From positions 302,039 through 366,038 of the IMG/VR virus record IMGVR_UViG_3300020154_000003: 64,000 nucleotides of DNA; one strand, 5' to 3'. The notes beneath the pieces are model-generated. The model was not told the origin of the DNA and searched no databases. It saw only the letters and a program-made list of their open reading frames with translations. The first letter of the stretch is position 1. Every line of letters starts with the position of its first letter. The position numbers were made by a program, and so were the translations under genes. Shown here piece by piece: positions 38,420-56,525 of this stretch.

Positions 38420-40648
38420 TTAATTCATCGTTATTGTCCACGCATAATTATTTACTAATACGTAAACTTGTTCTTTAGCACTCGCAGGAGTACCATCATT
38501 TGATCCCAATATAAATCCGGTAGGGGCTTGGTAAATTCCGGTTGGAGTGGCATTTGTTCCTCCAATATTCATACTTCTAGCTACACTCACATTAAAAAAA
38601 CTCCATTTAGACCTATTTGTGTATAAATTATTTATTGTAGCATCAACATTAGTAAGATTTATTCCATTATCTTGGATAAGAATATTTGTTGGTATAAAAT
38701 TATTTGTTCCAAACGGGAATGTCATATCTAAATTACAACCATTGAAATGGAATAAGGCTGGTACGGCTGGACTGTTGTAATTAACGTTTTCTAAATTTAT
38801 TATTGTTGTTAATCCAGTACAACCAATACCACTAAACGCATGACTATTAGTGAATCTACTACGTGCTTCAGTTGTCGGCATAACCAATTCAGTTATTGGA
38901 GTATTATCAATAATAATAGCAGTAAATTGTGAAGTACTTGTTTTACCACTTAAATTCAACGAGGATAATTGAGTATCAATTGCACGTATATCTGTCAATG
39001 AGGTAAAAGTACTTGGTATTGATGCATCCAATTGAATACATCCATTACATCTGAACGATAATAACCCTGTGTGGGCTGTAAAATTGACTAAATTAGTTAA
39101 GCCAGTATTAAATCCAACGCCAATATGTTGTAATTTGTTTACGTTAGGCAGTATCCAATTACCACCTATCTTACAACTACCTATCATCAGAGTAGTCATA
39201 TTTATCAATCCACTCAAATCGCCATCATCACCTAATCCATCAGAAGTTTGAGAAAAATATGAATTACTTGCAGTATTTACATTATTTGAAAATGATAATT
39301 CGGTTAAAGATGAGTAACCGTTAATTTTAGTTAATAAATCAGGAGTTGTGGTTATAGATAATTCATTATCATATAAAACCAAGTCTTGAATAAATGGTAG
39401 TGTATTGGGTAATGTTATGTTACTACATAACACACCCGGAATATGTAATGATCTTAATTCTCCACCATCCAGACCACTTATGTCAATATTGTCAAATCTA
39501 TTAGTTTCACTTTGATTTAAACCAACTCTAAAATCACGTAAGGTAGAACGTGATTCAGTAATACTTATATCACCAGTCCAATTATTACCATAACAATAAA
39601 ATGCTAATAAATTTGATGAAATTTCATTATGTGTTATATTTTTACTATACGTTTTATTATTACTAATAAAAACCATACACCTCAAATTCGGGCTATTAGT
39701 AATAATTTCTTCAAAAACATTCATATTGAATGAAGATGAAGCACTAGCAGAGAGATTTTGAATATGTACCCAACTCCAATCTGTTTTACCACTCGGCAAG
39801 ACCAAAGAAGTCATATTAGTATTCGTTGATATAAGGAACTCTTTCAAATTAGTCATATGACTAACATCTAAAACACCCCTCAATGTAGTTGTACCTACTG
39901 CAGGACTAGATATTAAGCCAGAATACAATCCAAACACTAATGCACGAGCATTTGTGGCTTCTGACAAGAGAGTAGTTACCCCTGTTAAATTACATTGTGC
40001 TAGAACAATACTTTCAACAGTTGAAGGGATTTGTCCAGTTACACCAGTCAGACCTAACGTCTCTCTAAGTTGAAAATGTATTAATTTTGGATTATTAAAC
40101 TTAAAATTTACTCTTGTGATAAATGATTCGTGTATATCAACAGCCTCTAAATTGGGAAATTGCCTCATATCCAAATCAATTTCACCAACCAAATTGTTTA
40201 TTGTAGCTTGAGGTGTTGAATTTAGTAAGTGAGCAAATTGTACCAAAACAGTTTCATGATATGGAAGTATTGTTTTAATTTTTCTGGTTGGTGGAGAAAA
40301 TGCCGCACTTGAACTATGACGGAAATATCGAATCTCAGTATTTGTGTAAACAAATGTGTATTCCATTGAATAGTTTATACCCCCTATTTGAGCACCGCCA
40401 GCAAAAATTTGAACCCTAGCTGGTAATAGTGTTTTTGGATTGCCATCATAAGCGGTTAATACAGTAGATAATAATGCTTGTAAATTCGGATTCGTTCCAC
40501 TAACATCATCAAAATCAAATATATAACGAGCATTAATTCCCCCGTATTTACTTCCATGTCGAGATGCAATATCTCGATTAGAACCATTGACAATGCCGTT
40601 GGCTTCCTGTATAATAAAACATGTTGGTGTTCCTTTAAATCCAAACAT
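38420..40648 (-). CDS. Leucine-rich-repeat protein B
   Basis: LRRs; C-terminus QAPTGFILGSNDGTPASAKEQVYVLVNNY.W.ITMN nearly identical to LRR A. Confidence 0.8.
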   Translation of the reverse strand: MFGFKGTPTCFIIQEANGIVNGSNRDIASRHGSKYGGINARYIFDFDDVSGTNPNLQALLSTVLTAYDGNPKTLLPARVQIFAGGAQIGGINYSMEYTFVYTNTEIRYFRHSSSAAFSPPTRKIKTILPYHETVLVQFAHLLNSTPQATINNLVGEIDLDMRQFPNLEAVDIHESFITRVNFKFNNPKLIHFQLRETLGLTGVTGQIPSTVESIVLAQCNLTGVTTLLSEATNARALVFGLYSGLISSPAVGTTTLRGVLDVSHMTNLKEFLISTNTNMTSLVLPSGKTDWSWVHIQNLSASASSSFNMNVFEEIITNSPNLRCMVFISNNKTYSKNITHNEISSNLLAFYCYGNNWTGDISITESRSTLRDFRVGLNQSETNRFDNIDISGLDGGELRSLHIPGVLCSNITLPNTLPFIQDLVLYDNELSITTTPDLLTKINGYSSLTELSFSNNVNTASNSYFSQTSDGLGDDGDLSGLINMTTLMIGSCKIGGNWILPNVNKLQHIGVGFNTGLTNLVNFTAHTGLLSFRCNGCIQLDASIPSTFTSLTDIRAIDTQLSSLNLSGKTSTSQFTAIIIDNTPITELVMPTTEARSRFTNSHAFSGIGCTGLTTIINLENVNYNSPAVPALFHFNGCNLDMTFPFGTNNFIPTNILIQDNGINLTNVDATINNLYTNRSKWSFFNVSVARSMNIGGTNATPTGIYQAPTGFILGSNDGTPASAKEQVYVLVNNYAWTITMN

Positions 40649-40656
40649 TTCATAAA

Positions 40657-43600
40657 TTAATTAGACTGCATATCAGGAGTGGTCACAACATCTAACCTAC
40701 CACCATTCATGCATATTGCAGTTATTATATCTTCTGAATGCGCTGGAGAACTACCATTTGTTGTTGGATTAGTAAGTACAGGAGTAGTTCCGAATGGGAA
40801 TCTATAACGACCACTAGCCCAAGTAAATGATTTGTTTGATGTATCCATTATAATCTTAAACATATACTGTTTACCAATTGTTTCACCAGTATAATTGAAC
40901 GATGTTACGTTACCAGTAACATTAAGTAAGAATATATCGGCAGTTGTAAGGTCTACTACAACATTTCCAGCAACACTACCGCTAAATACAACTAGAGTTG
41001 GTGTTATTTGACTGGTTATACCTGTCACATAATTCACATCAACCAACGAATGTTTGGTGAAACCAGTTGCATAATTACCTTTATATTCAATACCTGCTTT
41101 TATCGCTCTACCATCAGTAAATGTAGTACCTGTTTTAGTGATAATGAATCTAGCAAGTTCATCATCATCATTGTTTCTAAAAGTAACATCAAATCCGTAT
41201 GGTGAGAACAACACATCATTAGCAGTGCCATCATCTTCAATGATTTGTTGAAGTACTTGAGGTTGCTCATCTGGTTTATCGTATTGATTTGCATTACTTA
41301 CGTCTAAATGTGCATACCTACCGAAGTTATTCCCGTTGGCAGTCGCTTCAATACCTGAACTACGAACTTTAAATTCATTATATTTATCTGTCAAATCATC
41401 AAAGCTGATGGTCGTTCCATTAAAGTGTTTTACTTCAAAAGAAGTTGAACCCATCGTAAAACCATCATCATATTCAGTTGTTACCGAAAGAGCAGCATTA
41501 AAAGCACTGTTACCGAACGTAACTGTACTGCTATGACTCAAACTAGTTGAGTCTAACGAAGTATCACCACTCAATGAACCACCCAATATTATCACACCAT
41601 TATTGTCTGTCAAACCATTACCAACAAGAATGCTAGTACTACCACCAGTTAACGTGGAAGTTATGCCAGTTACATAAGCAACATCAGGTATTGATCTGGC
41701 AGTATATAATTCATGTAGATTTTCATTATACTCAATGACAGCATTTCGCATCACTAATTTACCAGCATCAAGTAATCCATTTTCGTCTAATCGGTAAAGT
41801 CCTGTATTTAATGTTTTGGGATCGTGGTATGTATATCCGTTTAATAATATCTTATTTTCAGGCAGTAATGAGACAAACCCACCAGTTAGACTTATACTAC
41901 CACCACCGTATCCTAATTTGAAATCATGGTTAATAGTACCATCGATATTCAAGTTTATTAAATTACCTCCTTGTCCATTTTCATCTGATAGATTATTACC
42001 ATTATATCTATTAAATGCTCCCGATGCTAAAATAGTACCGTTTGGCAACCAACATACTTTACTTACCTCAGTAGATGGTATATGAAATGTATATGTAAAA
42101 CCAGTACCCGGATCAAAACTACCCACATTAGTTCCACCACTAGTTATAAGCTTTAATCTAGGATTATTGAATCTGGCAATAATAACTTCACCAGTCTCTT
42201 GATTAACATCAAACCACATACCTCTTTCACCGTCAGAAAGAACATTAAAACCAGCAACTCTCGAACCGTCTGAATTTAATTTTGTAAAACCCGGAGAAAA
42301 CACACCATCATAATAATTATACGCACCGCAGGCATATATTGATCCACCAGACAATTGAAATACTCTCTCAACCCAACTATTGGCTGTTCCACCTGCGCCA
42401 CCCCATCTAAATCCACTACCATAAGTAAATCCTGTATCAACACCCCCATTCTCATTTAGACGAACAATACTCCATGCACTAGTCCCATCAAATTCTGTGA
42501 AAGTACCACCTACAAGAATCTTATCATCATCCTGTACGAAGATTGAATAAACAGAACCGTTAAAACCAGTACCGCCTGAGAAAGTAGCGTCATAACTACC
42601 ATCTGAATTCAATCTAGCTATTCTATTTACCGTATTTCCATCAATTTGAGTAAAATCTCCACCAATAATTATCTTACCATCTTGTTGCACATCGACAGCC
42701 CTTATTGTGTTATTAATGGAGGCAGGGTTAAAATCACCACTATTAGTACCATTTTCAATTAAGACTGTTATATATTTTTTAGTTAAATCGGTATTCCATG
42801 ATGTGAAATTACCTACAACAATCACTTTATATGCTCCATCACTCGGAAATTGTGGATCAATAACTTTAGTTTGAGAAACATAGCCAGAATTTCCACCTAG
42901 ACCAATATTAAATCCACTTTCAACATCGAAAAATAACCCCATTCCGTAATTTTGTAGCTGAAGTCTACTACTAGCGATATTAATTTCAGTATGTCCTTCA
43001 AGGGTTCCTCCGAGTCCAAAGTTTCCTGTACCACCTGTGTTCACTGTTCTAACCAATCCATTACTAGCGGTTTCACCTTGAGATATTACCCAAGCCTTAT
43101 CAACTAATGATCTATCAACATAATTTTCTGAATAATCAGCATCATAGATTGCAGCACTTCCACCGATAATGATTTGATCAATCACTGGAATAGTCCCAAT
43201 ATTTACTTCTCCATTACTTTTGAATCTAAAAACACCGGGATTGTTTAAATTAACATCTGTTGCGTATGTACCAGCATAAATAAAACCATCTGAATTTTCT
43301 ATAATAGTATACGAGTAAATCTGTGAATCCAGAGAGTCTCCAAAATTTAACTCATGTATACCATCAGCAGATAATTTACACAAATACTTAGTAGCCGTAC
43401 CGTTATAATTTTGAAAACTACCTGCAACAAGTATTTTATCACCTTCGGTGAGTTTCATTGCATTTATATCATTATCAAAACCAGTACCACTAGAGAAAGT
43501 AGTGTCATATGTGCCATCCTCATTAAGTCTATGAATACGACCTGTATGTCCTTCAAAAGTTGAGAACTCACCTCCTATGATCAATTTTCCTGATGACTGT

Positions 43601-44409
43601 TGTAAAATACCTCTAAAATAGCCTCCAGATGATCCTGTAACTATGTTTGCACTAAAAGTTGTATCTACGCTACCATCACTATTCAATCTAGCGATACCTA
43701 ATGCAGGTGTCGAATTAACTGCTTCAAAATAACCTCCAACAACAATTTTACCATCTTCTTGTATGCAAATAGCCGACACTTCACTATCAAAACCACTTCC
43801 AAGGTTGGTCATAAATGAGGTATCTTGAGTACCATCTGAATTCAGCTTAACAAAATGGCTACTAGAATTACCGTTAAAATCATCAAACCATCCACCAACA
43901 AATATTTCTCCGCTTTCAGACTTAGCTATACAGTTAGCATAATTACCCACACCACATGCAGTGCCAATAGCAGTGTTAAAATCAGTATCTAAAGTACCAT
44001 CAGCATTTAATCTAGTGAACCCATTTGTTGTTGTTCCATTAAATTCACTAAAGTAACCACCTATTAGTATTTTATCATCGTTTTGCATTGCAACACACAA
44101 ACCGTCACTGTCAAATCCAGTTCCCGTATTTGTTGTAAATGTGGCATCAAGTTCACCAGTCGCACTTACTTTTTGTATTCCGTAACCAGTCTCAACGCCA
44201 TTCCATGATGAATCTTCACTAGCCATTATTACACTACCATCCGCTTGAAGACCAAAACCATACGCAGTACTAAAATTAAGACCAGTACCGGGGACAAAGA
44301 ATGTCTCGCCTCTAAATGTAATTGTTGATGCTGATTTACCTATTGTTAGGTCATTTTCATGACCGTGATAAAATTTACTGTTATCTAGTAATTGTTTTGT
44401 TATTAACAT
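40657..44409 (-). CDS. Tail fibre/appendage protein with two delta-60-type beta-propellers
   Basis: Repeats of QxDGKI(L/V)(V/I)GGxF...RLNxDGxxDxxF; FTKHSLVDVNYVTGITS connector. Confidence 0.75.
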   Translation of the reverse strand: MLITKQLLDNSKFYHGHENDLTIGKSASTITFRGETFFVPGTGLNFSTAYGFGLQADGSVIMASEDSSWNGVETGYGIQKVSATGELDATFTTNTGTGFDSDGLCVAMQNDDKILIGGYFSEFNGTTTNGFTRLNADGTLDTDFNTAIGTACGVGNYANCIAKSESGEIFVGGWFDDFNGNSSSHFVKLNSDGTQDTSFMTNLGSGFDSEVSAICIQEDGKIVVGGYFEAVNSTPALGIARLNSDGSVDTTFSANIVTGSSGGYFRGILQQSSGKLIIGGEFSTFEGHTGRIHRLNEDGTYDTTFSSGTGFDNDINAMKLTEGDKILVAGSFQNYNGTATKYLCKLSADGIHELNFGDSLDSQIYSYTIIENSDGFIYAGTYATDVNLNNPGVFRFKSNGEVNIGTIPVIDQIIIGGSAAIYDADYSENYVDRSLVDKAWVISQGETASNGLVRTVNTGGTGNFGLGGTLEGHTEINIASSRLQLQNYGMGLFFDVESGFNIGLGGNSGYVSQTKVIDPQFPSDGAYKVIVVGNFTSWNTDLTKKYITVLIENGTNSGDFNPASINNTIRAVDVQQDGKIIIGGDFTQIDGNTVNRIARLNSDGSYDATFSGGTGFNGSVYSIFVQDDDKILVGGTFTEFDGTSAWSIVRLNENGGVDTGFTYGSGFRWGGAGGTANSWVERVFQLSGGSIYACGAYNYYDGVFSPGFTKLNSDGSRVAGFNVLSDGERGMWFDVNQETGEVIIARFNNPRLKLITSGGTNVGSFDPGTGFTYTFHIPSTEVSKVCWLPNGTILASGAFNRYNGNNLSDENGQGGNLINLNIDGTINHDFKLGYGGGSISLTGGFVSLLPENKILLNGYTYHDPKTLNTGLYRLDENGLLDAGKLVMRNAVIEYNENLHELYTARSIPDVAYVTGITSTLTGGSTSILVGNGLTDNNGVIILGGSLSGDTSLDSTSLSHSSTVTFGNSAFNAALSVTTEYDDGFTMGSTSFEVKHFNGTTISFDDLTDKYNEFKVRSSGIEATANGNNFGRYAHLDVSNANQYDKPDEQPQVLQQIIEDDGTANDVLFSPYGFDVTFRNNDDDELARFIITKTGTTFTDGRAIKAGIEYKGNYATGFTKHSLVDVNYVTGITSQITPTLVVFSGSVAGNVVVDLTTADIFLLNVTGNVTSFNYTGETIGKQYMFKIIMDTSNKSFTWASGRYRFPFGTTPVLTNPTTNGSSPAHSEDIITAICMNGGRLDVVTTPDMQSN

Positions 44410-47400
44410 TTTTTTATTTTATATAAATACTTAAATTATTATCCTAATATGGTGCCGCCCATCCAATTTATACCGTTATACACTAACATAATTGACGTAT
44501 AATTTGCGTTAATTATCGCTGTTGAACTTCCATTAATTAAATACCCATTACCATCAACAGTTATATTATTATCTAACGCACCACCTATTGCATCGCAAAT
44601 ATAAATCTGCTGTTTAAAAGTAGGCGATGGCGGTAAGTAAATAACTCCTGCGGTATCCCCAAAATAGTGAATGAAATGAGATGACGTTGACGCTGTAAAG
44701 GATGAGCCAGTTACAATCTCCAAACCAACTACATTTACTGCAATCCCTGATGTTATGCCAGTTACGTAGTTAACATCCACCAATGAATGTTTCGTAAAAC
44801 CTGACGATAGATCAGTAACATAACGGAACTTCTGTGTCGATAATAATTCAGGATGTACAACAAAATATTCTTCAAAATCAGAATAATTGCGCTTAAATAT
44901 TGGATTTTCCTGTACTCCACTATTGATATACATTAGAGTATCAAATACAAAAACCATATTATTAGGGTTGTTATCTGAACCTGTATGTTGATCAATATAA
45001 TTACCATTCAAATCTACCCTAACCATTTGAGATTTAGATGACATGAATATATGATAGTCTTCATTTACGAATACATTACTATATGTACCAATACTTGGTA
45101 CTTGAGCAACGTTCGTATTGAATTCTTCATCGAATACTCCTGTCGCATCAACAACCATAAGGCCAGTATTCACCGATGAACTTCCATATGTTGAAAATGA
45201 ACCTGATAGTAAAAATCTATCAGTACTATCCAATTTTATAATTGAAGAAACTTGTCCATCAAATATTTCAGGAATAAATGTTTCACTTATTGTCCCATCT
45301 GTATTTAAAGCAACTATATAAGGAGTGCTTAACGTATTTCCACTATACTCAGTAAAAGCCCCAACAACTATAAGAGTATCATCATTTAATACCGCAAAAT
45401 CATATGGAGTGTCATTAAATCCAGCACCAGTATCAAAAGTATTATCTAAAGTACCATCTGTGTTTACTCTTCTTATATAAGTCACACCACTTACGGATTC
45501 AGTTATTCTTATGTAAAGTTTACCATCACTCAAACCTAACACTTTACCCACATTATGGATAGATTCACCACTTAAATAAAACGTAAAACCAGTATCAACA
45601 GTACCATCATGTAATAATTTAACAAGACAAGTACATTGGAAGCTATTAAAACTGTTAAATACACCATACACATAAATGTTTTCATCGTCATCAACAAAAA
45701 TACCTGAAATATTATTCGATGGGCCTGAACCAATATTGCTTGAGAAATTTTCATTTATAACTCCATCACCACTTAATAATGCTATACCACTTGAATTAAT
45801 ATCGTTAACGTCAGTAAATGCACCTGAGATCAAAAGATCACCTGTTGAGGGTATTCTTGCCATCCTATTGATACTTGCATTGACAGAAATATAATTGAAC
45901 TGGTTTAGTTTTTCATATGATGTTGAAATAGTCTTTGACGTTTCAGAATAATCACGGAAATTTAAATGGAAACCATCATTAACTTTATCTAAAGTTAACG
46001 TAACTACATCACCAGAAATGGCTGTTTGACCTGTCAATTCACCACCCAAAACCACCGTGTCAAGAGCACGTTTAACGCCATTATCTGCCAGATTAAGTAA
46101 GTTGCTCGTTAAACCAGTTACATAGTTAACATCGGCAATACTATGTTTTGTAAATCCTGACGAATAATCAGAATTATAGTTCATTTTATCATTTAGAGTA
46201 ATATTTTCTAAAGGAAAATCTGCTTCAAGACCAGTATCTGAAAGTAATGCCAAGTTAATACACGAATTTCCTTGATATGTCGTAAATGCCCCTCCAACTA
46301 GATATTGAACTGGTGAAGAATCCACTTTTTCAATTACTTTTGGCCCTCCACTAAAACCAAACGCAGCATTGAAGCCAGTACCAATATTAAATGTATTATC
46401 ACGAGTACCATTACTATTCAAACGAACAATTCTATTTGTTGTTGTTCCTGATAAAATAGTAAATCTACCAACTGCAATAATTTTAGTACTATCTACTAAC
46501 ACATCATGTACTGTATGAATAACACTGCTACTAAAACCAGCATCCATATCAAAGGTATTGTCAACACTACCATCAGTATTTAAGCGAATTAATTTATTAT
46601 AACCAGTAACCCCGCTATATGAAGAAAAACTACCACCCACCAAAATTTTATCATCTGGTTGAATTTCAATCACAAATACTGTGCTATTAAAACCAGCACC
46701 AGCATCAAATGTATTATCAACACTACCATCAGTATTTAAGCGAATTATTCTATTGAATCCAGTAACACCACTGTATGAAGTAAAATTACCACCAACCAAA
46801 ATTTTATCATCAGATTGAATCTTAATTGTATTCACTGTACCATTAAAACCAACACCGACATCAAATGTGTCATCAATACTCCCATCATTATTTAATCTAA
46901 CAATACGATTAGATGTGACTCCATCATAACTAGTAAAATCACCACCAACCAGAACTTTACTGCCGACAACTAATTCATCTACTTCAATAATATTCACATC
47001 ACCATTAAAACCATCACCAACAATGAAGGTATTATCGAATGCAAGACTAGAATCGTTTAATCTTAGTATTCTATTTTGCGTTGAGGCATTAAATGTTGTT
47101 GAGAATCCACCACCAACATAAAGACCATCAGTAGTCCTCGCCAATGTTTTTATATTTGATATATTTACCGATCTTTCAAGATTATATTGTGTATCATACT
47201 TTAAAAGTGTTATGTCGTTTCCAACATAGATGGCCGCACCGTATGATAATATTGCTAATACTTCACCGCTACTATAAAATTTACTATTTAATTGAATTCC
47301 CTTACTATATGAGTTCCAAAGATTGAATTGGGATGACTTCTGTGTAAAAATACCATCACTAGCTATAGTTGTCGATTCGGTTAACTCCCCACCAATTTTA

Positions 47401-50400
47401 ATAACTCCATCACTGCTTTTTGTAATACCATTCTCACCTTGAATATAATTATCTACATACGATTTTGGTGTTAAATAAGAATCTCGTAATCTAGTTGCAT
47501 CATAAGTTCCATCATATGCTATAAAACTATTTTTAGCAATAATATTTGCCTCACCAGTTAGCAATTCACCTTCGGTGGAAATTTTAATAAATCTATTTAT
47601 ATCATTTCCGTTATAGCTAGTGAAATCTCCACCAGCATAAACACTACTTCCACTACTTTGGACGACCCACACATAACTATTAATTCCACCTTTAATGTTG
47701 AATAACTCATCAATAGTACCATCAGAATTTAATAAAACAATATCACTAAATGGAATTGAGTTATACGTATCAAAATCACCACCAAGCAGAATTTTACCGT
47801 CATCCCTAATCTTTACTGAGTTAACTGTTGATGTTCCCCCTTCTATTCCACTACCAATTTCAAAAGTATTGTCAACACTACCATCACTATTTAATCGAAT
47901 TACACTATTTGCAGAAACACCATTAAATCCAGTAAAAAGACCTGCTAACACTATTTTACCATCACTCTGTAGTCCCATTTTGAGAGCATATTCACTACCA
48001 ACAGCGAAGCCAGTTCCTACGTTGAATGTTTCATCAATGCCACCGTTAGAATTTAATCTTATTAACGAATTAGCGGTGACACCACTATATGTTGAATATA
48101 AACCAGCCACAACTATTTTACCGTCATCTTGTATCAAGATGTCAGAAACAAACGCATCAAACCCTGATCCAGTAACAAAGCTATCATCTAAACCACCATT
48201 ACTATTTAATCGAACAATCCTACCCACAGTAATTCCACTATAAGCAGTGAAATCACCACTCACAACTATTTTACCGTCATCTTGAATGGCCAAACCATTA
48301 TATATCGCCCCATCGAAACCACTACCCACTTCGAACGAATCATCAATAGTACCATTTGAATTTAATCTCACTATTCTATTAACTGATTGAGAATTGAAAG
48401 TAGTAAACTCCCCAACCAGCACTATTTTATTATCTGATTGTATCGCTATTCGTTGAACATATCCACTAGCACCAGCACCAATATTATTGTTAAAATCTTC
48501 ATCCAAAGAACCATCACTATTTAATTTAGCTAACCCACCAACAACAACTCCATCATATGCTTCGAAATCACCCCCAATTAATAATGATCCATCAACAAAA
48601 TATTGTATGTCCCATACAGTTCCAGTAAATCCGCTTCCAATCCTAAAATCATAATTAGTAATATCAATACCAACATTTTTAAATGTAGTTGTATCACCAC
48701 TAAGTTTAGAAATATATGTTTGACCAGTTAAAATTAACTGATCGTTTGAACCTTGATAAAACTTATCTTTACTTAATTTTTGTTTTGTAGTAAACATTTT
48801 TTATAATATTTTTATATTTTAATTTTATGCGAACGATACAACTGTCCAATTCACTGTGTTATAAATTAAAGTTACTGCGCCGTAATTTGTGTTAATTAAT
48901 GCAGTGATCGATCCATTTATTGTTTTTCCATTACCATTTATTGTGATGTTTGCCGTTAACGCATTGCCTTTTATGTCCGCAATAATTATTTTTTGATATG
49001 GTGTTGGCGCTAAAGGTAAATACAGAGTAACTGCACTTTCTCCTGAGATTCCAATGAAATCTGTAGTGGTCGTTGCAGTGTATGAACCACCAGTTATATT
49101 AATACCATTAATTGTGGTTGACCCACCAGTAATTCCACTTACTGCAGATGAAATAGCACTATCAACATATTTTTTATTAGGTATCCATAAATCACCATGT
49201 CTTGAAACACCTGATACTGTGTAATCTGCGTAATAACGCATACCTGATTCGTGGGCATCCTTAATAACAGTTAAAGTATCTGTCATTTCTATACTGCTAA
49301 CGAATTTACTCTCACTATTTATGTATCTTAGAGATGCAAGTGCGTTATTTGCTTGTAAACCATTTACTATATCAGTACCATTAGTTGACCCAACAATAAC
49401 TTGATGTTGATTAAATTGTGCAATTGAATAATTAGGACTAGATGCTGTTTTTAATACTAATGCATTTGCTCCTGAATCTATTGTTGTAAGACCACTTAAT
49501 GTTGTTGTTCCACTAGTTTTCCAAAAACTACCACCAACTAATGTTGATGTAATGCCAGTTACATAATTAACGTCAACTATAGAATGTTTACTGAAATTTG
49601 ATGAATAATCACCTCCATAAGTTAAACCTGATGAATTAAAGGTTACTGTTTTTGGTGACCCATCATAATCTTGGGTAAATACGATATTTCCTACCGAACC
49701 CATATATATTGTGTTGCTAGAAGCAATTGGTCTATAACCAGTTGTCGTACCTACGCCACTAGGGTTACCAATAACCATAACGTTATCGACCAGTAATGTC
49801 GATAAATGAAGACCAGTACTTGGGCCAATAAAAGTATTACCATTACCTGTAATCGTTGCTGTCATGAAACCACCATAAGGGCCAATACCCATGTTGTGAT
49901 GTCCACGAATTCTTGGAAGAGACCAAGAGCCGTATCCCGTATTCTTTTGACCTATTACAACCCCTTGTCCAGCCTCACAACCAACATAAGTGCCCTTTTC
50001 TGATGGCCCACTACCTTCCATTGCGTGAACACCAACAGCTACGTTGAATTGGTTGCTTCCTGTTCCGATAGCACCCGGAGAACCACCTTGTGAACCCCAC
50101 AATGCTCTTTCTCCAATACCAATATTTCCACGTCCAAGAGATGCTTCCTGACCAGCACCACCAATCAAGACTTCGTAATCTTCAAGCATGGTTGCATTCA
50201 TACCTGCACCATAACCAAGTAAAACAGTTCCATATCCATCTCTAAAAACAGCGTCTTTACCTGTATAACCACCTACTGCGGTTATATATCCATATGAGCC
50301 AGTGGCACCTGAAAGAAAATCTGCACCACTTAATGCATATGTACCTATTGCAACAGTGCTTTCCCATGTTGTTGCATCACCAGTAATTCCTGCAGAAGCT

Positions 50401-52240
50401 TCAAAACCCATTACAACACTATAACTGAACGGTTGAGAGGTTTTACCTGCTCGAACACCCATCATAATGTTTGATGTACCTTGATTCGACCCCATACTTG
50501 TCCATCCAGTTGCAATATCAAATCCGATACCTATATTTCTATCACCTCTAAATGTTGAGAACCACGGAGAAGTACTAAATGAACCAGATGTTACTAACGA
50601 TGTTAAAATATTTTGACCAATCGTAATATTACCTCCTGCAGGTGAATTCGGATTTCCTGCATTTGTTCCAAGTTTAATATCGGTAAATCCATGTGTTAAC
50701 GATCTTGCAGAATTATGTCTGAATGCTAAGTGTGCTACATCTTGAATACCCCCAACAGTTGCTCGTAATACAGGAGTGTTTCCAGTTTCAAAAGTAGTTC
50801 CGTAATCAAATATTAGTGAATGATTGTTTGAATCAATTATTGTAGCACCAGTTAATGTGCCTCCTAAAACGATGTTCTTACCAACGGTTGTCAATCCGTT
50901 AGATGAACCTGTGATTGATCCACCCCCTAAGTTTGATGTGAGACCAGTAACATAGTTTACATCAACTAATGAATATTTTGTAAAACCAGATGAAAAATCA
51001 GAGGGATATTTGATACTAGCCTTATCGATTTCAATGACTTTCTTTTCTAAGCCATTAGCATGTACAGTAACATCGTATCTACCATCTTCAGAAGATTCAG
51101 TTGCGTCATTCCAAATATATGCGATACCAGCCTCTGCATTAGGTACGTTTAATAATGAGTTGGTTAAATCAAAATTTAATTTAACACCAAAGCCTGTTTG
51201 AGGCCCACCAGAACCTGCAAATAATTCACGACTAACATATAATGAGGTCGTAACACCGCTTCTTACATTACTGGTATTACGTGCATATAATCCATTATAA
51301 TGGACATTTAATTCAGCTTTATTGCTCGTATTATCACCATTGAGTTTACTTTCTAATAAAACGCCTGAACCACCAAACGCTTTGAATTCTATGTCACCAT
51401 TTTCATAAGTGTCAACATGGAAACCACCGCCCAATAAATCATTGATGTAAATACCATAATCGGTATTCATTTCAAGATAACCTATCGGGCCACTACTACT
51501 ACCTAAATATAATTCTCTATAGTCAGTATCGTTGTCGCCAGTACCTTCAATTACGGTTGATTCAATATCCAATACACCACCTAATCTTACATTTATTCCG
51601 TTTTTCGTTAAACCATTATCTGCAGTGAATCCACCAGTTATACCAGTCACAAAATTCACATCAACCAAACTATGTTTTGTAAAACCTGACGAATAATCAG
51701 CAGCATATTTGATACCTGTTTCTCCAGTTCTAGTATCTGTTATAGTAAAACCGCTTAAAGAGAGATTTATCCCTATTGTTTCGCTTGTTGATAAATTTTT
51801 AGCACTTAAACTTATTTTGCGAGTATCTGTTATTGCAAAAGATTGATCATTACCTTCAATAAGTGTTTCTTGTGTTAATGGATTTCCTCCAAGAACTATT
51901 GTGTTATCAATTTTTAACAATCCACTACCCGCAAACGTCACACCAGATGCAGCAGCTATTTGGGAAGTTATACCAGTAACGAAATTAACGTCAACCAAAG
52001 AGTGTTGTGTAAATCCAGTTGAATAATCACCACCATACTCAAGACCTTTCTTAATTGCTCTGGTATCAACAAATATAGTATCACCAGTCAAAGTCCCACC
52101 AAGACCGATTACGTTATCTATCTTAGTTAATCCACCACCGGCCTGTGTGAAACCAGAACCAGCAGTCAAACCAGTTACGTAATTAACATCCACTAACGAA
52201 TGTTTTGTAAATCCGCTTGAAATGTTTGTAACGTATTCAA
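41011..52240 (-). repeat. Connector repeat Y-x-x-(D/N)-(Y/F/I/L)-S-x-x-F-T-K-H-S-L-V-D-V-N-Y-V-T-G-(I/L)-T (approximate consensus) shared by three fibre genes
   Basis: Eight close copies near 41020, 44760, 46120, 49560, 50950, 51650, 51975, 52180, plus four degenerate copies. Confidence 0.9.
44439..48797 (-). CDS. Tail fibre/appendage protein with three delta-60-type propeller regions
   Basis: Many 52-54-aa QxDxKI...RLNSxGxxDxxF repeats; connector modules; C-terminal fibre-tip domain. Confidence 0.75.
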   Translation of the reverse strand: MFTTKQKLSKDKFYQGSNDQLILTGQTYISKLSGDTTTFKNVGIDITNYDFRIGSGFTGTVWDIQYFVDGSLLIGGDFEAYDGVVVGGLAKLNSDGSLDEDFNNNIGAGASGYVQRIAIQSDNKIVLVGEFTTFNSQSVNRIVRLNSNGTIDDSFEVGSGFDGAIYNGLAIQDDGKIVVSGDFTAYSGITVGRIVRLNSNGGLDDSFVTGSGFDAFVSDILIQDDGKIVVAGLYSTYSGVTANSLIRLNSNGGIDETFNVGTGFAVGSEYALKMGLQSDGKIVLAGLFTGFNGVSANSVIRLNSDGSVDNTFEIGSGIEGGTSTVNSVKIRDDGKILLGGDFDTYNSIPFSDIVLLNSDGTIDELFNIKGGINSYVWVVQSSGSSVYAGGDFTSYNGNDINRFIKISTEGELLTGEANIIAKNSFIAYDGTYDATRLRDSYLTPKSYVDNYIQGENGITKSSDGVIKIGGELTESTTIASDGIFTQKSSQFNLWNSYSKGIQLNSKFYSSGEVLAILSYGAAIYVGNDITLLKYDTQYNLERSVNISNIKTLARTTDGLYVGGGFSTTFNASTQNRILRLNDSSLAFDNTFIVGDGFNGDVNIIEVDELVVGSKVLVGGDFTSYDGVTSNRIVRLNNDGSIDDTFDVGVGFNGTVNTIKIQSDDKILVGGNFTSYSGVTGFNRIIRLNTDGSVDNTFDAGAGFNSTVFVIEIQPDDKILVGGSFSSYSGVTGYNKLIRLNTDGSVDNTFDMDAGFSSSVIHTVHDVLVDSTKIIAVGRFTILSGTTTNRIVRLNSNGTRDNTFNIGTGFNAAFGFSGGPKVIEKVDSSPVQYLVGGAFTTYQGNSCINLALLSDTGLEADFPLENITLNDKMNYNSDYSSGFTKHSIADVNYVTGLTSNLLNLADNGVKRALDTVVLGGELTGQTAISGDVVTLTLDKVNDGFHLNFRDYSETSKTISTSYEKLNQFNYISVNASINRMARIPSTGDLLISGAFTDVNDINSSGIALLSGDGVINENFSSNIGSGPSNNISGIFVDDDENIYVYGVFNSFNSFQCTCLVKLLHDGTVDTGFTFYLSGESIHNVGKVLGLSDGKLYIRITESVSGVTYIRRVNTDGTLDNTFDTGAGFNDTPYDFAVLNDDTLIVVGAFTEYSGNTLSTPYIVALNTDGTISETFIPEIFDGQVSSIIKLDSTDRFLLSGSFSTYGSSSVNTGLMVVDATGVFDEEFNTNVAQVPSIGTYSNVFVNEDYHIFMSSKSQMVRVDLNGNYIDQHTGSDNNPNNMVFVFDTLMYINSGVQENPIFKRNYSDFEEYFVVHPELLSTQKFRYVTDLSSGFTKHSLVDVNYVTGITSGIAVNVVGLEIVTGSSFTASTSSHFIHYFGDTAGVIYLPPSPTFKQQIYICDAIGGALDNNITVDGNGYLINGSSTAIINANYTSIMLVYNGINWMGGTILG

Positions 52241-52943
52241 TAGCATGACTAAACTTAACTGTAGCACCTGAAATAGTAGTTCCTGATTCAACATTAGTTA
52301 CACCACTACTTTTCCAGTAGTTGTTACTTCCTCCCAATGCATCATTTACAAATTGGCCAACATACAAAAACGCTTCAACAAACCCCGGTCTTGCAGCACT
52401 TACATTATATCCTGCTGGAGGGTCTTGCACAAATAAAATACCATTGTAGGTATCTAAATACCAATTTATAGAGTCAAATTTTGTTATTTGAGTACTACCA
52501 TTTGTTTGATATACTTTGGGATCATATTCGGTACTACCATCTGACTTCAACGTACCGTACAATGAAGGTACAACCTGCAGTTTACCTAACGTTTGATGTA
52601 AATATGTCCCTGCGCTAAAGCTAGGGAAAAGGTAACCGTTGGCATTGTAGTCTGCAGGAAGCTTTAATCTATAACCTTGTGAACGACCTACTAATATCTC
52701 AGTGTCGGGTATAATGTCAACTTCAAATTTTATGCGTTCAACAACACCATCATTTTGATATTCTGATACCAAGCCATTAGTTTCTGGTAAGCCATCTATT
52801 TCATTACCAAAAACTGTCGTATATGAGATTTGAATATTTGAAGAAATACCTTCCTCTGACACAGCAAAATTTTGTTGTGTATGAGCCTTACCACTTAACT
52901 TTTTAAATGAAATCGCGTCAGTATTTTGTGTATTTAATGCCAT
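48825..52943 (-). CDS. Tail fibre protein with YadA-like beta-roll
   Basis: Five connector repeats; NxxIGxxA-type repeats; C-terminal domain shared with the preceding gene. Confidence 0.7.
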   Translation of the reverse strand: MALNTQNTDAISFKKLSGKAHTQQNFAVSEEGISSNIQISYTTVFGNEIDGLPETNGLVSEYQNDGVVERIKFEVDIIPDTEILVGRSQGYRLKLPADYNANGYLFPSFSAGTYLHQTLGKLQVVPSLYGTLKSDGSTEYDPKVYQTNGSTQITKFDSINWYLDTYNGILFVQDPPAGYNVSAARPGFVEAFLYVGQFVNDALGGSNNYWKSSGVTNVESGTTISGATVKFSHAIEYVTNISSGFTKHSLVDVNYVTGLTAGSGFTQAGGGLTKIDNVIGLGGTLTGDTIFVDTRAIKKGLEYGGDYSTGFTQHSLVDVNFVTGITSQIAAASGVTFAGSGLLKIDNTIVLGGNPLTQETLIEGNDQSFAITDTRKISLSAKNLSTSETIGINLSLSGFTITDTRTGETGIKYAADYSSGFTKHSLVDVNFVTGITGGFTADNGLTKNGINVRLGGVLDIESTVIEGTGDNDTDYRELYLGSSSGPIGYLEMNTDYGIYINDLLGGGFHVDTYENGDIEFKAFGGSGVLLESKLNGDNTSNKAELNVHYNGLYARNTSNVRSGVTTSLYVSRELFAGSGGPQTGFGVKLNFDLTNSLLNVPNAEAGIAYIWNDATESSEDGRYDVTVHANGLEKKVIEIDKASIKYPSDFSSGFTKYSLVDVNYVTGLTSNLGGGSITGSSNGLTTVGKNIVLGGTLTGATIIDSNNHSLIFDYGTTFETGNTPVLRATVGGIQDVAHLAFRHNSARSLTHGFTDIKLGTNAGNPNSPAGGNITIGQNILTSLVTSGSFSTSPWFSTFRGDRNIGIGFDIATGWTSMGSNQGTSNIMMGVRAGKTSQPFSYSVVMGFEASAGITGDATTWESTVAIGTYALSGADFLSGATGSYGYITAVGGYTGKDAVFRDGYGTVLLGYGAGMNATMLEDYEVLIGGAGQEASLGRGNIGIGERALWGSQGGSPGAIGTGSNQFNVAVGVHAMEGSGPSEKGTYVGCEAGQGVVIGQKNTGYGSWSLPRIRGHHNMGIGPYGGFMTATITGNGNTFIGPSTGLHLSTLLVDNVMVIGNPSGVGTTTGYRPIASSNTIYMGSVGNIVFTQDYDGSPKTVTFNSSGLTYGGDYSSNFSKHSIVDVNYVTGITSTLVGGSFWKTSGTTTLSGLTTIDSGANALVLKTASSPNYSIAQFNQHQVIVGSTNGTDIVNGLQANNALASLRYINSESKFVSSIEMTDTLTVIKDAHESGMRYYADYTVSGVSRHGDLWIPNKKYVDSAISSAVSGITGGSTTINGINITGGSYTATTTTDFIGISGESAVTLYLPLAPTPYQKIIIADIKGNALTANITINGNGKTINGSITALINTNYGAVTLIYNTVNWTVVSFA

Positions 52944-52970
52944 TTATTTTTTTGTATATCTATCTTAATA

Positions 52971-55900: not shown

Positions 55901-56525
55901 GACCCGGAGAAAACGGTTCTACTGGTGTAATTGCTCCCGGAATGGTTGGGGATACAAAGTATGTTGTGTTCGCACTCATACCAGTAAGGGATGTTAAATC
56001 CATGAAACCAGCATAGGTCAATGTAAAAGTATCTGCATCGATGACGCTACTTACAAGACCAAGGAACTCATATGTATTTGCTTCATCAGCAATACCTTTT
56101 ACGTAACTCGTACCGTTAAATGACACAACATTACCAACTGAGAAACCGTGACTAGGTTGTGAGTATTTTTTCTTGATCGCATCACCACCACCTGAAGAAA
56201 ATTCAATCCAATTGGAGTTGTTCGCAAGTGCTGATACTTTTTGTGAACTGGTTAATCCAGTCCATGAAGGATACGGTAAAAATAATTGATATATAGTATC
56301 TGTTTCTGCAACATATACCAACATACCTAAACGTCTTCTACCTGATCCTAAACCAGATGCATCAAGATTACCTAATGTATCAGTTGGGATGTTATTTCTC
56401 TCATTTAGAGAGGCAAATTCTTGCCAACCTCCAACTCCAAGATATGAATAATGTGTTCCGTATGTGTCACCCGATGAACCGCCTACTACTGGCGAAGCTA
56501 CTACTGTACCTAAAGGATATGCCAT
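52971..56525 (-). CDS. Large virion structural/fibre protein with tandem duplicated domain
   Basis: GGWQ...R..IP...RRRLGMLVYV N-terminus; two HGFS(V/L)G.VV...Y.K domains; G/T/S-rich. Confidence 0.65.
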   Translation of the reverse strand: MAYPLGTVVASPVVGGSSGDTYGTHYSYLGVGGWQEFASLNERNNIPTDTLGNLDASGLGSGRRRLGMLVYVAETDTIYQLFLPYPSWTGLTSSQKVSALANNSNWIEFSSGGGDAIKKKYSQPSHGFSVGNVVSFNGTSYVKGIADEANTYEFLGLVSSVIDADTFTLTYAGFMDLTSLTGMSANTTYFVSPTIPGAITPVEPFSPGQSSRPILMTQESTKGLVLMMRSFTVSSESITGGTASGLRIERQTEQTGHGFSLGDVVMYSGGSYHKAVALESIHGFPVGLVREIFDANTFMLTFAGYIEGMNTATDDLGSPITASTTYYLSPTSPGKLTKTKPTAAGQLVKPIYQSINAFDGIVVNQKGTPTFLPISGITNLQTELDSKIDSSEIGAPGGIVPLGVDSKIDISYIPGNLKEIFVVANIAERDSRFVASGATPGAGQIESFEGLKVFVIQTSGSTGTTSGLTGSVEFIDTTGFLEWSATTSTVHISYNDITDIPALVNQITAGDGIDVTNSGTGNTTVSVDYDDVYIDVNGNSLQVKESSIDATRVKFQTTGGTTGQFVVRGTGDTFNVIDLPASVIGPAEDGDYTDGVFTDFTPTTPTGTAIDRFNELFLLLLPAQPSSLTSINTINSFVSGKLTWGVSKTMSGYVNVGTNAGNAAVDLNGTYSASGTRLGIINGPVSGTLNSAVTGDSSGIPYLDNAFSNGDQGKLVMYRNGSIIAQLTLSGTTAATSNSYFSVTSVKNVKSDNGSPVTTFKYRTGTYTIPVSGMTGGFNYIRIMHTGATFSTLTNYLEFVYDNNANNIALSSTGLTNLTLSGTKWVSGVKFHTSGTVQYQGTISNAYRNVYSTSSSAIDFPNRENLGDITSMNVIGTGTTGRTSSTLKTLPPLLTSTNSHLTSLSVLATLPISTTKLLGNVGSTGRIASAISVAHPFTSKQVSGGLSTLTGFLFYNVSDSATEKSEPFIGETYRLQTRDYTSLTYANVDGGTYNWDSTSSLVGASAFHNTGLLVFNDELMYPNAAYLTTQYGITTGNFAAVTNAPVGNDNYTSASGNRSHYRLFKSTAGATQSTLTFAIVHNGTSSNFLTNGGTGGTVSGNNIKFEFLIMRSGGAKHGWANPFASVGNTEGIANTSISHVGSTTTVSCTLSTVPRVALGDIVIVRIIASSGWTNRIQTVTVSNI

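What the first reader, a model, noticed from the sequence alone, without database searches (positions are those of the whole stretch)
41011..52240. Reusable connector module strings different head domains along three giant fibres
Seen: FTKHSLVDVNYVTG(I/L)T (8 close and 4 degenerate copies), often followed by (A/S)xNGL(T)K-x4-LGGxLT, separates propellers, the beta-roll and tip domains. Inference: a trimerisation/spacer cassette that also provides homology for recombinational domain shuffling, a beads-on-a-string receptor-binding toolkit.
Basis: partly seen in the sequence, partly recalled or inferred. Interest (0 to 1): 0.65.

Follow-up and report, generated by a model that had tools for sequence, protein, structure and literature searches.

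The report
Trimer connector repeat in giant phage fibres
Three giant neighbouring genes of a 366-kb soil jumbo phage are strung together from different globular domains joined by one repeated ~80-residue connector that is predicted to form a three-chain fibre, belongs to a large unnamed family, and marks several places where relatives have gained, lost or swapped domains.

Summary
The 16-residue motif FTKHSLVDVNYVTGIT has 8 close and 4 degenerate copies in three adjacent minus-strand ORFs of 1250, 1452 and 1372 aa, against 0 in 2000 shuffles. It is the core of a ~65-85-aa module: G[IL]xY..DYS..F..RSLVD.xYVTGxT, a linker, then NGLTK.G..v.LGG.LTG.T. The module separates DUF5122 propellers, a Gly-rich repeat region, small unknown domains and a C-terminal beta-sandwich.

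The window lies in a 366-kb soil jumbo phage. Pfam, PHROGs and NCBIfam have no model for the module, and PDB and 50,697 GenBank phages give no match. A profile search finds it in 4,267 protein clusters, with up to 31 copies per protein.

A three-copy model of gpC 215-480 scores ipSAE 0.81 against a best control of 0.00, with motif residues on the three-fold axis. This supports a trimer connector.

Relatives differ in domain number and order. Two indel junctions map inside the module's conserved motifs, and one 71%-identical domain block begins and ends at modules.

The "DNA homology" part is not supported. The copies are ~75% identical in DNA, the longest exact run is 16 nt, and synonymous sites are random. 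A general breakpoint test was not significant.

Verdict: a real, unnamed structural connector family, which probably serves as a tolerated in-frame junction rather than a homology-driven hotspot.

The parts
40657..44409 (-). gpA, 1250 aa. Order: N-terminal ~45 aa like gpB, propeller region 1 (aa 46-405), degenerate connector, propeller region 2 (aa 489-873), degenerate connector, 127-aa unknown domain, connector, 118-aa C-terminal domain.
   Evidence: ORF list; translation; Pfam DUF5122 E 2e-84; modules.
44439..48797 (-). gpB, 1452 aa. Three DUF5122 propeller regions (aa 46-413, 489-856, 939-1303) separated by connectors, then an XD1-like C-terminal domain.
   Evidence: Pfam DUF5122 E 1.5e-129; the third region scanned alone E 9e-16; modules.
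48825..52943 (-). gpC, 1372 aa. Order: N-terminal domain (aa 1-214), three connectors, 154-aa unknown insert, connector, Gly-rich repeat head (aa 715-1086), connector, degenerate connector, XD1-like C-terminal domain.
   Evidence: no Pfam, PHROG or NCBIfam family.
52059..52301 (-). gpC connector M1 (aa 215-295; motif aa 245-260 at 52164-52211).
   Evidence: iE 2.6e-24.
51828..52079 (-). gpC connector M2 (aa 289-372; motif at 51966-52013).
   Evidence: iE 3e-27.
51534..51767 (-). gpC connector M3 (aa 393-470; motif at 51636-51683). In the trimer model L426, V427 and V432 touch their own copies in the other chains.
50802..51071 (-). gpC connector M4 (aa 625-714; motif at 50937-50984). The 71% block shared with L004 begins here, at aa 641.
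The fold was not verified.
   Evidence: Sequence; no Pfam hit; 71% identical to L004_14767; a ~92%-identical soil relative has 50197-50492 replaced by unlike sequence.
49437..49685 (-). gpC connector M5 (aa 1087-1169; motif at 49548-49595). The 71% block shared with L004 ends here, at aa 1136.
49047..49301 (-). gpC degenerate connector M6 (aa 1215-1299; ...DLWIPNKKYVDSAIS...).
   Evidence: iE 9e-20.
48828..49109 (-). gpC C-terminal beta-sandwich with the XD1 fold (CBA120 TSP4 XD1, T4 gp9/gp10-like). It is the conserved C-terminus of the family.
   Evidence: AF2 pLDDT 97-98; Foldseek E 1.5e-6; VIA Z 14.7, rmsd 1.7 A over 96 aa; present in 67 of 122 proteins.
47334..47558 (-). gpB degenerate connector (aa 414-488; ...YLTPKSYVDNYIQGENGITKSSDGVIKIGGELT).
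   Evidence: iE 6e-15.
45984..46229 (-). gpB connector (aa 857-938; motif at 46107-46154).
   Evidence: iE 2e-29.
44643..44888 (-). gpB connector (aa 1304-1385; motif at 44751-44798). It has the first half only and leads directly into the C-terminal domain.
44442..44726 (-). gpB XD1-like C-terminal domain, 49% identical to that of gpC.
42946..43194 (-). gpA degenerate connector (aa 406-488; YDADYSENYVDRSLVDKAWV...).
   Evidence: iE 1e-21.
41527..41790 (-). gpA degenerate connector (aa 874-961; motif YTARSIPDVAYVTGIT at 41659-41706). Against L003, identity jumps from 24-34% upstream to 70-75% downstream at this point.
40927..41145 (-). gpA connector (aa 1089-1161; motif at 41014-41061). The junction of the 393-nt indel relative to L003 maps to the codons for VTGIT|S, about 41011-41028.

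Best explanation
The repeat is a structural connector (shaft unit) of homotrimeric virion fibres of a jumbo phage.

How each module is built (~65-85 aa). It has a strand G-[IL]-x-Y, a loop ..DYS..F.., a short amphipathic helix (R/H)S(L/I)VD.xYVTG, a Gly/Ser linker, and in most copies a beta-hairpin NGLTK.G..v.LGG.LTG.T. In the model, the hydrophobic residues of the helix pack on the three-fold axis and the hairpin pairs with the hairpin of the neighbouring chain.

What it does (inferred). Three chains intertwine at every connector. This would keep them in register while each chain folds its own globular 'bead' between connectors. The beads are DUF5122 propellers, a Gly-rich repeat head and small unknown domains. 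The chain ends in an XD1-fold beta-sandwich that is conserved across the family.

Why domains can be exchanged. Every connector has the same structure. A junction that falls at equivalent positions of two connectors therefore gives an in-frame fibre that can still fold. As a result beads have been gained, lost and exchanged between genes and phages at these points.

What is shown and what is inferred. Shown: the copies, the protein-level conservation, the wide family, the variable bead order in relatives, and two junctions inside the conserved motifs. Predicted: the trimer. Inferred: the registering role, the location on the virion, and that the beads bind receptors. DNA homology between copies in this genome is too low to drive the exchange. 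Microhomology plus selection for in-register products is the more likely route.
For: - Copies and significance.
- Phage context: the record is 366,038 bp and CheckV-complete. The window also holds a baseplate wedge protein, DNA polymerase and ribonucleotide reductase.
- Protein-level selection: 13-16 of 16 residues are identical between close copies, but DNA identity is ~75% and codon identity is 0.515 against 0.470 expected.
- Monomer model: the motif forms a helix and NGLTK..LGG forms a hairpin, mean pLDDT 69.6.
- Three-copy model: ipSAE 0.81 in each of 3 runs, best of 3 controls 0.00, ~1050 contacts, partner pLDDT 84, runs agree in >=97% of contacts, with self-contacts at L426, V427 and V432. 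By the tool's calibration, 20 of 30 proteins solved as homo-pairs and 1 of 23 solved as single chains reached the mark. That calibration used two copies and its own alignments, so it holds only roughly here.
- Family: 136 word-search hits, each with 3-14 modules. The profile search gives 4,267 clusters at E<=1e-3 and 403 at <=1e-30.
- Bead variation: L003 has one propeller where gpA has two, plus one extra module-and-insert unit. Parts of gpC lie in three different genes of the syntenic relative L004.
- Junctions inside motifs. In a screen for indels with a repeated junction, 16 of 18 lie on a module core.
- C-terminal domain: XD1 fold, Z 14.7.
Against: - There are no coordinates or experiment for the trimer. 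The score is the model's own confidence.
- The monomer model has no match in PDB, so the fold class is unassigned.
- No proteomic or imaging evidence shows that these proteins are in the virion.
- The generic breakpoint test is not significant.
- The indel screen can only detect junctions that lie in repeats.
- Connectors lie between domains by definition, so any domain-level shuffling will place breakpoints near them.
- One L004 chimera (gpC N-terminus fused to a gpD body) has its junction ~45 aa upstream of the first motif.
Confidence: 0.66

Rival explanations
1. One reading: the connector is kept mainly as a stretch of DNA homology, so that homologous recombination between copies, within or between co-infecting genomes, shuffles head domains.
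For: - Junctions lie inside the conserved motifs, and block ends lie at modules.
- The motif 'flavour' is lineage-specific. Window paralogues are 12-15 of 16 identical to each other but only 9-10 of 16 identical to their L004 orthologues. This looks like past homogenisation between copies.
Against: - The longest exact run between copies is 16 nt, and core DNA identity is 69-83%.
- Synonymous codon identity is at the chance level (0.515 against 0.470), so there has been no recent gene conversion.
- Family-wide, copies within a protein are barely more alike than copies between proteins (0.456 against 0.435).
- Conservation is in the peptide, not the DNA.
Confidence: 0.2
2. The motif is conserved because it is a recognition site for a common partner, such as a fibre-assembly chaperone, another fibre, or a metal or ligand. 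The lineage-specific flavour would then reflect co-evolution with that partner.
For: - Eight copies keep an almost identical 16-mer while synonymous sites are randomised.
- The flavour differs from that of the orthologous copies in L004.
- Related branched fibre systems dock through dedicated domains (PMC8825819).
Against: - In the trimer model the hydrophobic motif residues are buried on the axis, which leaves little surface for a partner.
- No candidate partner gene was identified.
- Helix burial alone explains strong conservation.
Confidence: 0.1
3. The proteins are not tail fibres. They could be head or neck decoration fibres, or secreted or surface adhesin-like proteins, and the repeat is simply their shaft unit.
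For: - The XD1-like domain also matches a capsid spike of phage Pa223 (9ny6, Z 10.5) and glycan-binding domains of bacterial proteases (PMC8825819).
- One family member is named 'trimeric autotransporter adhesin' by its source.
Against: - The best fold matches are baseplate and tailspike proteins (CBA120 TSP4, phage KP1 baseplate, T4 gp10 and gp9).
- The locus is conserved in three related phage contigs.
- All hosts of the family that could be inspected are phage-like contigs, several of 290-390 kb.
Confidence: 0.1

Closest known systems
Conserved motifs that delimit exchangeable segments in T-even tail-fibre adhesins: the glycine-rich motifs of gp38, and the motifs of gp37 described by Tetart et al. 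1998 as cited in PMC3157838
   Same: Short, highly conserved peptide motifs alternate with variable segments in host-recognition proteins. Comparative data show segment swapping at the motifs (PMC3157838).
   Different: Here the motif is part of an ~80-aa trimer connector between whole globular domains of 100-400 aa, not between loops of one small domain. It has no sequence similarity to those motifs. DNA identity between copies is too low for homology-driven exchange.
Branched tailspike complex of Ackermannviridae (CBA120 TSP4/TSP2) and T4 gp10/gp9: XD domains
   Same: The C-terminal domain of gpB and gpC has the XD1 beta-sandwich fold (Z 14.7, rmsd 1.7 A over 96 aa to TSP4 residues 77-178). 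These are also trimeric, modular fibres with short helical 'necks' between domains (PMC8825819).
   Different: In TSP4, gp10 and gp9 the XD1 domain is N-terminal or internal. Here it is the last domain. Sequence identity is only ~20%. No XD2 or XD3 domains were found. The connector module itself has no counterpart in those structures by sequence.
DUF5122 / delta-60 repeat beta-propellers (PF17164, TIGR02608)
   Same: The beads of gpA and gpB are clear members.
   Different: Here they are embedded, two or three per chain, in a phage fibre between trimer connectors. Full-text search found only one paper that mentions both DUF5122 and phage, and it is about modelling repeat proteins.
Triple beta-spiral shaft repeats of adenovirus fibre and reovirus sigma1 (recalled from knowledge, not tested)
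   Same: The second half, NGLTK.G..v.LGG, has the alternating hydrophobic and Gly-turn pattern of a hairpin repeat. In the model it pairs with the neighbouring chain.
   Different: There is only one hairpin per module, combined with an axial helix.

Membership tests
Any named family for the connector module (Pfam-A, PHROGs v4, NCBIfam, PDB sequences) | A significant profile or sequence match over the module | tested here: not met
   Pfam on whole proteins and on the 12 modules at E<=5 gave nothing relevant. PHROGs gave none for gpC and NCBIfam gave none. A PDB profile search had best E 0.65. tblastn against 50,697 GenBank phages gave no match.
Homotrimeric phage fibre | Three identical chains associate along the fibre axis | tested here: inconclusive
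   The three-copy model gives ipSAE 0.81 against a best control of 0.00, partner pLDDT 84, and >=97% contact agreement between runs. This is a prediction only, with no experiment and no coordinates.
Recombination-motif systems of tail fibres (T-even type) | Conserved motifs flank variable segments | tested here: met
   Modules alternate with unrelated inserts in 122 proteins.
Recombination-motif systems of tail fibres (T-even type) | Recombinant junctions lie inside the motif | tested here: inconclusive
   Two junctions were mapped inside motifs, and block ends lie at modules in L004. However, the generic test gave 0.28 against 0.26, and one chimera junction lies outside a connector.
Recombination-motif systems of tail fibres (T-even type) | Motif copies share enough DNA identity to pair | tested here: not met
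   The longest exact run is 16 nt and core identity is 69-83%. Codon identity is at the chance level.
DUF5122 / delta-60 beta-propeller | Tandem PF17164 / TIGR02608 repeats above the curated cut-off | tested here: met
   gpA scores 277.9 bits and gpB 422.4 bits against a cut-off of 27. TIGR02608 scores 183 and 227 bits against a cut-off of 76.5.
XD1 domain (CBA120 TSP4, T4 gp9 and gp10) | Nine-stranded mixed beta-sandwich that superposes on solved XD1 domains | tested here: met
   The AF2 model has pLDDT 97-98 over the domain. Foldseek gives E 1.5e-6 with probability 1.00. VIA gives Z 14.7, rmsd 1.7 A over 96 aa, and T4 gp10 gives Z 11.4. This shows the fold only; sequence identity is ~20%.
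   There is no Pfam hit at E<=1. Only 'faint' or precomputed PF05658 hits exist in relatives.
Collagen-like recombination repeats of Streptococcus thermophilus phage receptor-binding proteins (recalled from knowledge) | G-X-Y triplet repeats flank the variable region | tested here: not met
   The translations contain no G-X-Y runs in or beside the modules.
Triple beta-spiral | Inter-chain hairpin packing with the adenovirus-type repeat geometry | not testable with these tools
   Complex prediction returns contacts only and no coordinates. The monomer model gives no match.

The most novel reading that the evidence does not exclude
The module is a previously undescribed, very widespread trimer-connector domain (thousands of protein clusters, mostly on large phage contigs). 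It defines a 'beads-on-a-string' way of building giant fibres. Its two conserved sub-motifs would be the preferred in-frame junctions at which whole receptor-binding beads are added, deleted and moved between fibre genes. Lineage-specific motif flavours would record past homogenisation between copies. This would amount to a natural plug-and-play standard for fibre engineering.
Probability: 0.35. Interest if true: 0.7.

Novelty: new variant of a known kind. Interest (0 to 1): 0.58.

Why it matters
Host recognition by uncultured soil jumbo phages is almost unknown. This work identifies a compact, recognisable connector module, for which a profile now exists (A5). The module can be used in three ways:
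1. To find giant fibre genes in metagenomes.
2. To cut those genes into their functional beads.
3. To identify natural in-frame junctions at which beads have been exchanged.

If the trimer and the junction tolerance are confirmed, the module would be a ready-made linker standard for building chimeric receptor-binding fibres. It would also be a new domain family for Pfam and PHROGs. It further shows DUF5122 propellers, which have no known function, as probable receptor-binding heads of phage fibres.

Tried and rejected
Searches that found nothing:
- PDB sequence searches with the module profile and with whole gpC.
- Foldseek and VIA-wide searches with the monomer model of gpC 215-480 (best Z 3.4). 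This says little, because a single chain taken from an intertwined trimer is not a fair query.
- Atlas feature search: best score 0.88, unnamed viral clusters only.
- megablast and tblastn against GenBank phages: no match.
- The search for related loci: no close relative of gpC in viral contigs. The alignments A1 and A5 were too variable for its pattern search, so genome contigs was not scanned.
- Source names for NCBI and JGI members gave nothing useful.

Analyses that did not work or did not support the idea:
- Single-linkage clustering of inter-module inserts collapsed into one giant cluster and was abandoned.
- The generic test of block ends against module cores was not significant.
- Concerted evolution across the family was rejected: 0.456 within proteins against 0.435 between proteins.
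- The second three-way junction alignment (P0027 against P0015) was ambiguous.

Reads:
- Contigs of the source run over the stretch itself were filtered out. Its apparent 'joints' are only paralogous module copies of the same genome, since their spacings of 623, 3737 and 1356 nt match the window.
- The X3 joints have 32-nt sides and were not trusted.

Full report
CONTEXT

The window is bases 302039-366038 of a 366,038-bp virus record that CheckV rates complete. G+C is ~35% and every gene in the window lies on the minus strand. PHROG matches identify ribonucleotide reductase, a helicase, a family-B DNA polymerase, a baseplate wedge protein and a repair exonuclease. This is a jumbo phage.

Its DNA polymerase is only ~24% identical to the nearest GenBank phages, which are Salinibacter phages. 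The sequencing runs that hold the region are all soil metagenomes, from four studies.

The finding covers three adjacent ORFs separated by 27-29 nt:
- gpA, 40657-44409, 1250 aa
- gpB, 44439-48797, 1452 aa
- gpC, 48825-52943, 1372 aa

They are flanked upstream by gpD (1184 aa) and downstream by two LRR-like paralogues, gpE and gpF.

OBSERVATION

Residue shuffles of the three proteins give none in 2000 trials.

Aligning the copies shows a module of about 65-85 residues (A1): G-[IL]-x-Y-x-x-D-Y-S-S-G-F-T-K-H-S-L-V-D-V-N-Y-V-T-G-I-T-S, a Gly/Ser/Thr linker, then N-G-L-T-K-x-G-x-x-[IV]-x-L-G-G-x-L-T-G-x-T. The second half follows 9 of the 12 copies. It is absent or degenerate in the three copies nearest the C-terminal end domains: A1117 and B1334, which directly precede those domains, and C1117.

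The modules separate:
- two DUF5122 / delta-60 propeller regions in gpA and three in gpB;
- a Gly-rich repeat region in gpC;
- unknown domains of 127 and 154 aa;
- the C-terminal domains.

Relaxed copies of the motif also occur outside the window, in a 979-aa ORF and a 65-aa ORF of the same genome.

PROTEIN CONSERVATION VERSUS DNA CONSERVATION

The close copies share 13-16 of 16 residues. Their 48-nt cores are only 69-83% identical, and the longest exact run between any two copies, flanks included, is 16 nt.

At positions where two copies have the same residue, they use the same codon in 0.515 of cases. Codon usage alone predicts 0.470. Synonymous sites are therefore essentially randomised. 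The peptide is held by purifying selection, and there is no sign of recent duplication or gene conversion.

WHAT THE MODULE IS

No curated library has it. Pfam, PHROGs and NCBIfam give nothing, a PDB profile search gives nothing, and tblastn against 50,697 GenBank phage records gives nothing.

It is nevertheless common. The word search returned 136 unannotated metagenomic proteins of 750-2300 aa, several on contigs of 290-390 kb. Each carries 3-14 modules.

The family scans and the word search left the module unnamed, and the word search only sees proteins of similar length. I therefore ran the exhaustive profile search with 120 diverse modules (A5). It found 4,267 cluster representatives at E<=1e-3 and 403 at E<=1e-30, in proteins up to 5,546 aa with up to 31 matched stretches.

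Over 568 copies the core consensus is [IL]xYxxDYSxx[FY]xxRS[LI][VP]D[KAV]xYV[TD]GxTS, with Y23 at 99% and V42 at 94%. The two halves also occur separately: 473 hits have both halves, 124 have the first only and 239 have the second only.

STRUCTURE

An AlphaFold2 monomer model of gpC 215-480 with 55 homologous rows is only moderately confident (mean pLDDT 69.6). It places a short helix on SLVDVNYVTG and a hairpin on GLTK..vIGL.

Three copies of the same segment were then modelled together:
- ipSAE was 0.80, 0.81 and 0.81 in three runs. The best of three controls was 0.00.
- There were about 1050 inter-chain contacts, partner pLDDT was 84, and the runs agreed in >=97% of contacts.
- In the tool's calibration, 20 of 30 proteins solved as homo-pairs and 1 of 23 solved as single chains reached the mark. 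The tool warns that this holds only roughly for three copies and a user-supplied alignment.
- Contacts run along the whole chain.
- Residues L426, V427 and V432 of the motif touch their own copies in the other chains, which places them on the three-fold axis.
- The hairpin of one chain pairs with that of the next (for example residues 340-342 with 349-351).

This supports, but does not prove, an intertwined homotrimer in which both conserved sub-motifs form the axis. Neither Foldseek nor VIA finds a solved counterpart for the single chain. That result is uninformative for an intertwined fold.

C-TERMINAL DOMAIN

The last ~93 residues of gpB and gpC are 49% identical to each other. This domain is the conserved C-terminus of the family, present in 67 of 122 proteins, and a third copy ends a 662-aa ORF elsewhere in the genome.

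The domain folds with pLDDT 97-98. It superposes on the XD1 domain of CBA120 tailspike TSP4 (Z 14.7, rmsd 1.7 A over 96 aa), on baseplate proteins of phage KP1, and on T4 gp10 and gp9.

According to PMC8825819, XD1 is a nine-stranded sandwich whose role in TSP4, gp10 and gp9 is unclear ('spacer'). The same fold binds glycans in the bacterial proteases CpaA and StcE.

The domain is therefore not a variable tip. It may be a folding or registration cap, a conserved glycan binder, or a docking surface. gpA ends in a different 118-aa domain that is shared only with its L003 homologue.

DOMAIN ORDER IN RELATIVES

L003 (a 12.3-kb soil contig). It carries a gpA homologue followed by gpE-like, gpF-like and a 160-aa gene that is 90% identical.
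- Its C-terminal 360 aa are 70-75% identical to gpA.
- Its propeller part is only 24-34% identical, and it has one propeller region instead of two.
- It has one extra unit of 131 aa (module plus insert).
- At the DNA level both flanks of this 393-nt indel align to the same 80 nt of the window, 41015-41094.
- In a three-way alignment the window copy follows the upstream L003 module as far as ...ATGTGACAGGTAT and the downstream L003 module from ACCAGTCAAATAA onward. The junction therefore lies in the codons for VTGIT|S, at the end of the motif.

L004 (a 294-kb phage, syntenic; 55-58% identity in three flanking proteins). The parts of gpC lie in three different genes:
- gpC aa 1 to ~200 is fused to a gpD-like body.
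- gpC aa 1-458 matches a 1007-aa protein.
- gpC aa 641-1136 (M4, the Gly-rich head and M5) is 71% identical to the middle of a 1202-aa protein whose N-terminus and post-M5 segment are different. This block starts at the beginning of M4 and stops 4 residues after the M5 motif.

Across the family:
- N-terminal (~100 aa) and C-terminal (~135 aa) domains are shared at 60-80% identity between proteins whose lengths differ by up to 1000 aa.
- A second recent indel (P0077 against P0070, 93-96% identical, 204 aa) switches inside LGGTLTGNT, the second-half motif.
- A screen for indels with a repeated junction found 18 cases, of which 16 lie on a module core. That screen can only see junctions in repeats.

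Evidence against a special recombination role:
- The internal ends of blocks with >=65% identity are not closer to module cores than random positions (0.28 against 0.26 within 30 aa).
- The L004 chimera of gpC N-terminus and gpD body joins about 45 aa before the first motif.
- Connectors lie between domains by definition, so domain-level shuffling will place breakpoints near them by any mechanism.

LINEAGE-SPECIFIC FLAVOUR

The window copies, and those of L003, share the ...FTKHSLVDVNYVTGIT form. The orthologous modules of L004 read FNPRSLPDVAFVTGVT and FSARSIPDTGYVTGLT, which is 9-10 of 16 identical to the window orthologue. Window paralogues are 12-15 of 16 identical to each other.

This points either to old homogenisation between copies, predating the window/L003 split and since erased at synonymous sites, or to a shared constraint. 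Family-wide there is no general concerted evolution.

INTERPRETATION

The best-supported reading is that the repeat is the trimer-forming shaft and connector unit of giant, bead-on-a-string fibres. Because all connectors are structurally equivalent, junctions at equivalent connector positions yield viable fibres. This explains the observed bead gain, loss and exchange.

The claim that the cassette supplies DNA homology does not hold for this genome. Microhomology (11-16 nt) plus selection for in-register products fits the data better.

The location on the virion, receptor binding by the propellers and the other heads, and the fold of the Gly-rich region all remain inferred.

NOVELTY

Modular fibres with conserved motifs at exchange points are known, for example T-even gp37 and gp38 (PMC3157838) and the Ackermannviridae tailspikes (PMC8825819). 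Three things are new here:
1. This particular connector family has no name and no solved structure, and it was found in none of the 50,697 GenBank phage records searched, yet it is abundant in metagenomes.
2. It is used to string whole propellers and other domains along a single chain.
3. Junctions have been mapped inside its motifs.

I rate it a new variant of a known kind, with moderate interest.

Noticed in passing
window 50197-50492 (gpC aa ~817-915, inside the Gly-rich head): A ~92%-identical relative in another soil study (run X3) is collinear with gpC, but this 296-nt patch is replaced by 299 unlike letters. It may be a hypervariable patch of a receptor-binding head.
   Followed up: partly
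L004:6359-9982 and L004:3809-6355 (syntenic 294-kb phage): L004 has two gpD-like genes. One lacks gpD aa 245-580. The other carries the gpC-type N-terminal ~200 aa in place of the gpD N-terminus, so the N-terminal domain is an exchangeable attachment unit. That junction is not at a connector.
   Followed up: partly
Own genome outside the window: G000:C1:48071-51010 (-) and 51038-53026 (-): This is a second fibre locus. The 979-aa protein has a gpB-like N-terminus (33% identity over 73 aa) and a relaxed motif (DNYSDRSLVDKAYANK). The 662-aa protein ends in the same XD1-like domain (profile E 4.5e-33).
   Followed up: partly
Own genome G000:C1:148314-148511 (+): A 65-aa ORF consists almost entirely of the first half of the module (GLVYATDYTATFTERSLVDRIYVDGE). 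It could be a fragment or a small stand-alone protein.
   Followed up: no
window 36208-38418 and 38420-40648 (-): gpF and gpE are 37%-identical paralogues with weak leucine-rich-repeat signals and a more conserved C-terminal ~110 aa (DNA 76%). Both are kept downstream of the gpA homologue in L003. They are probably further host-recognition proteins.
   Followed up: partly
window 52971-56525 (-), gpD: This 1184-aa protein has no connector module. It has an internal duplication (GHGFS[VL]G[ND]VV...TF[TM]LT[YF]AG) and a different junction motif (PISGITNLQTELDSKI) at the point where the L004 chimera joins.
   Followed up: no
window 21176-25393 (-): A 1405-aa ORF combines an RNA-ligase-like region and a tRNA nucleotidyltransferase region (PHROG 755 and 2244). 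It is a large fusion that looks like an RNA-repair protein.
   Followed up: no
gpA, gpB and gp979 N-termini (window 44275-44409, 48663-48797; G000:C1:~50790-51010): These proteins share an N-terminal segment of ~45-70 aa (M..TKQ.L...KFY.G..D.L...G). It is probably a common attachment adaptor, so several different fibres would dock on the same site.
   Followed up: partly
L001:14843-22198 (366,127-bp ENA phage contig): A 2451-aa protein with 15 connector modules lies in another jumbo phage of almost the same genome size but with a different locus layout.
   Followed up: no
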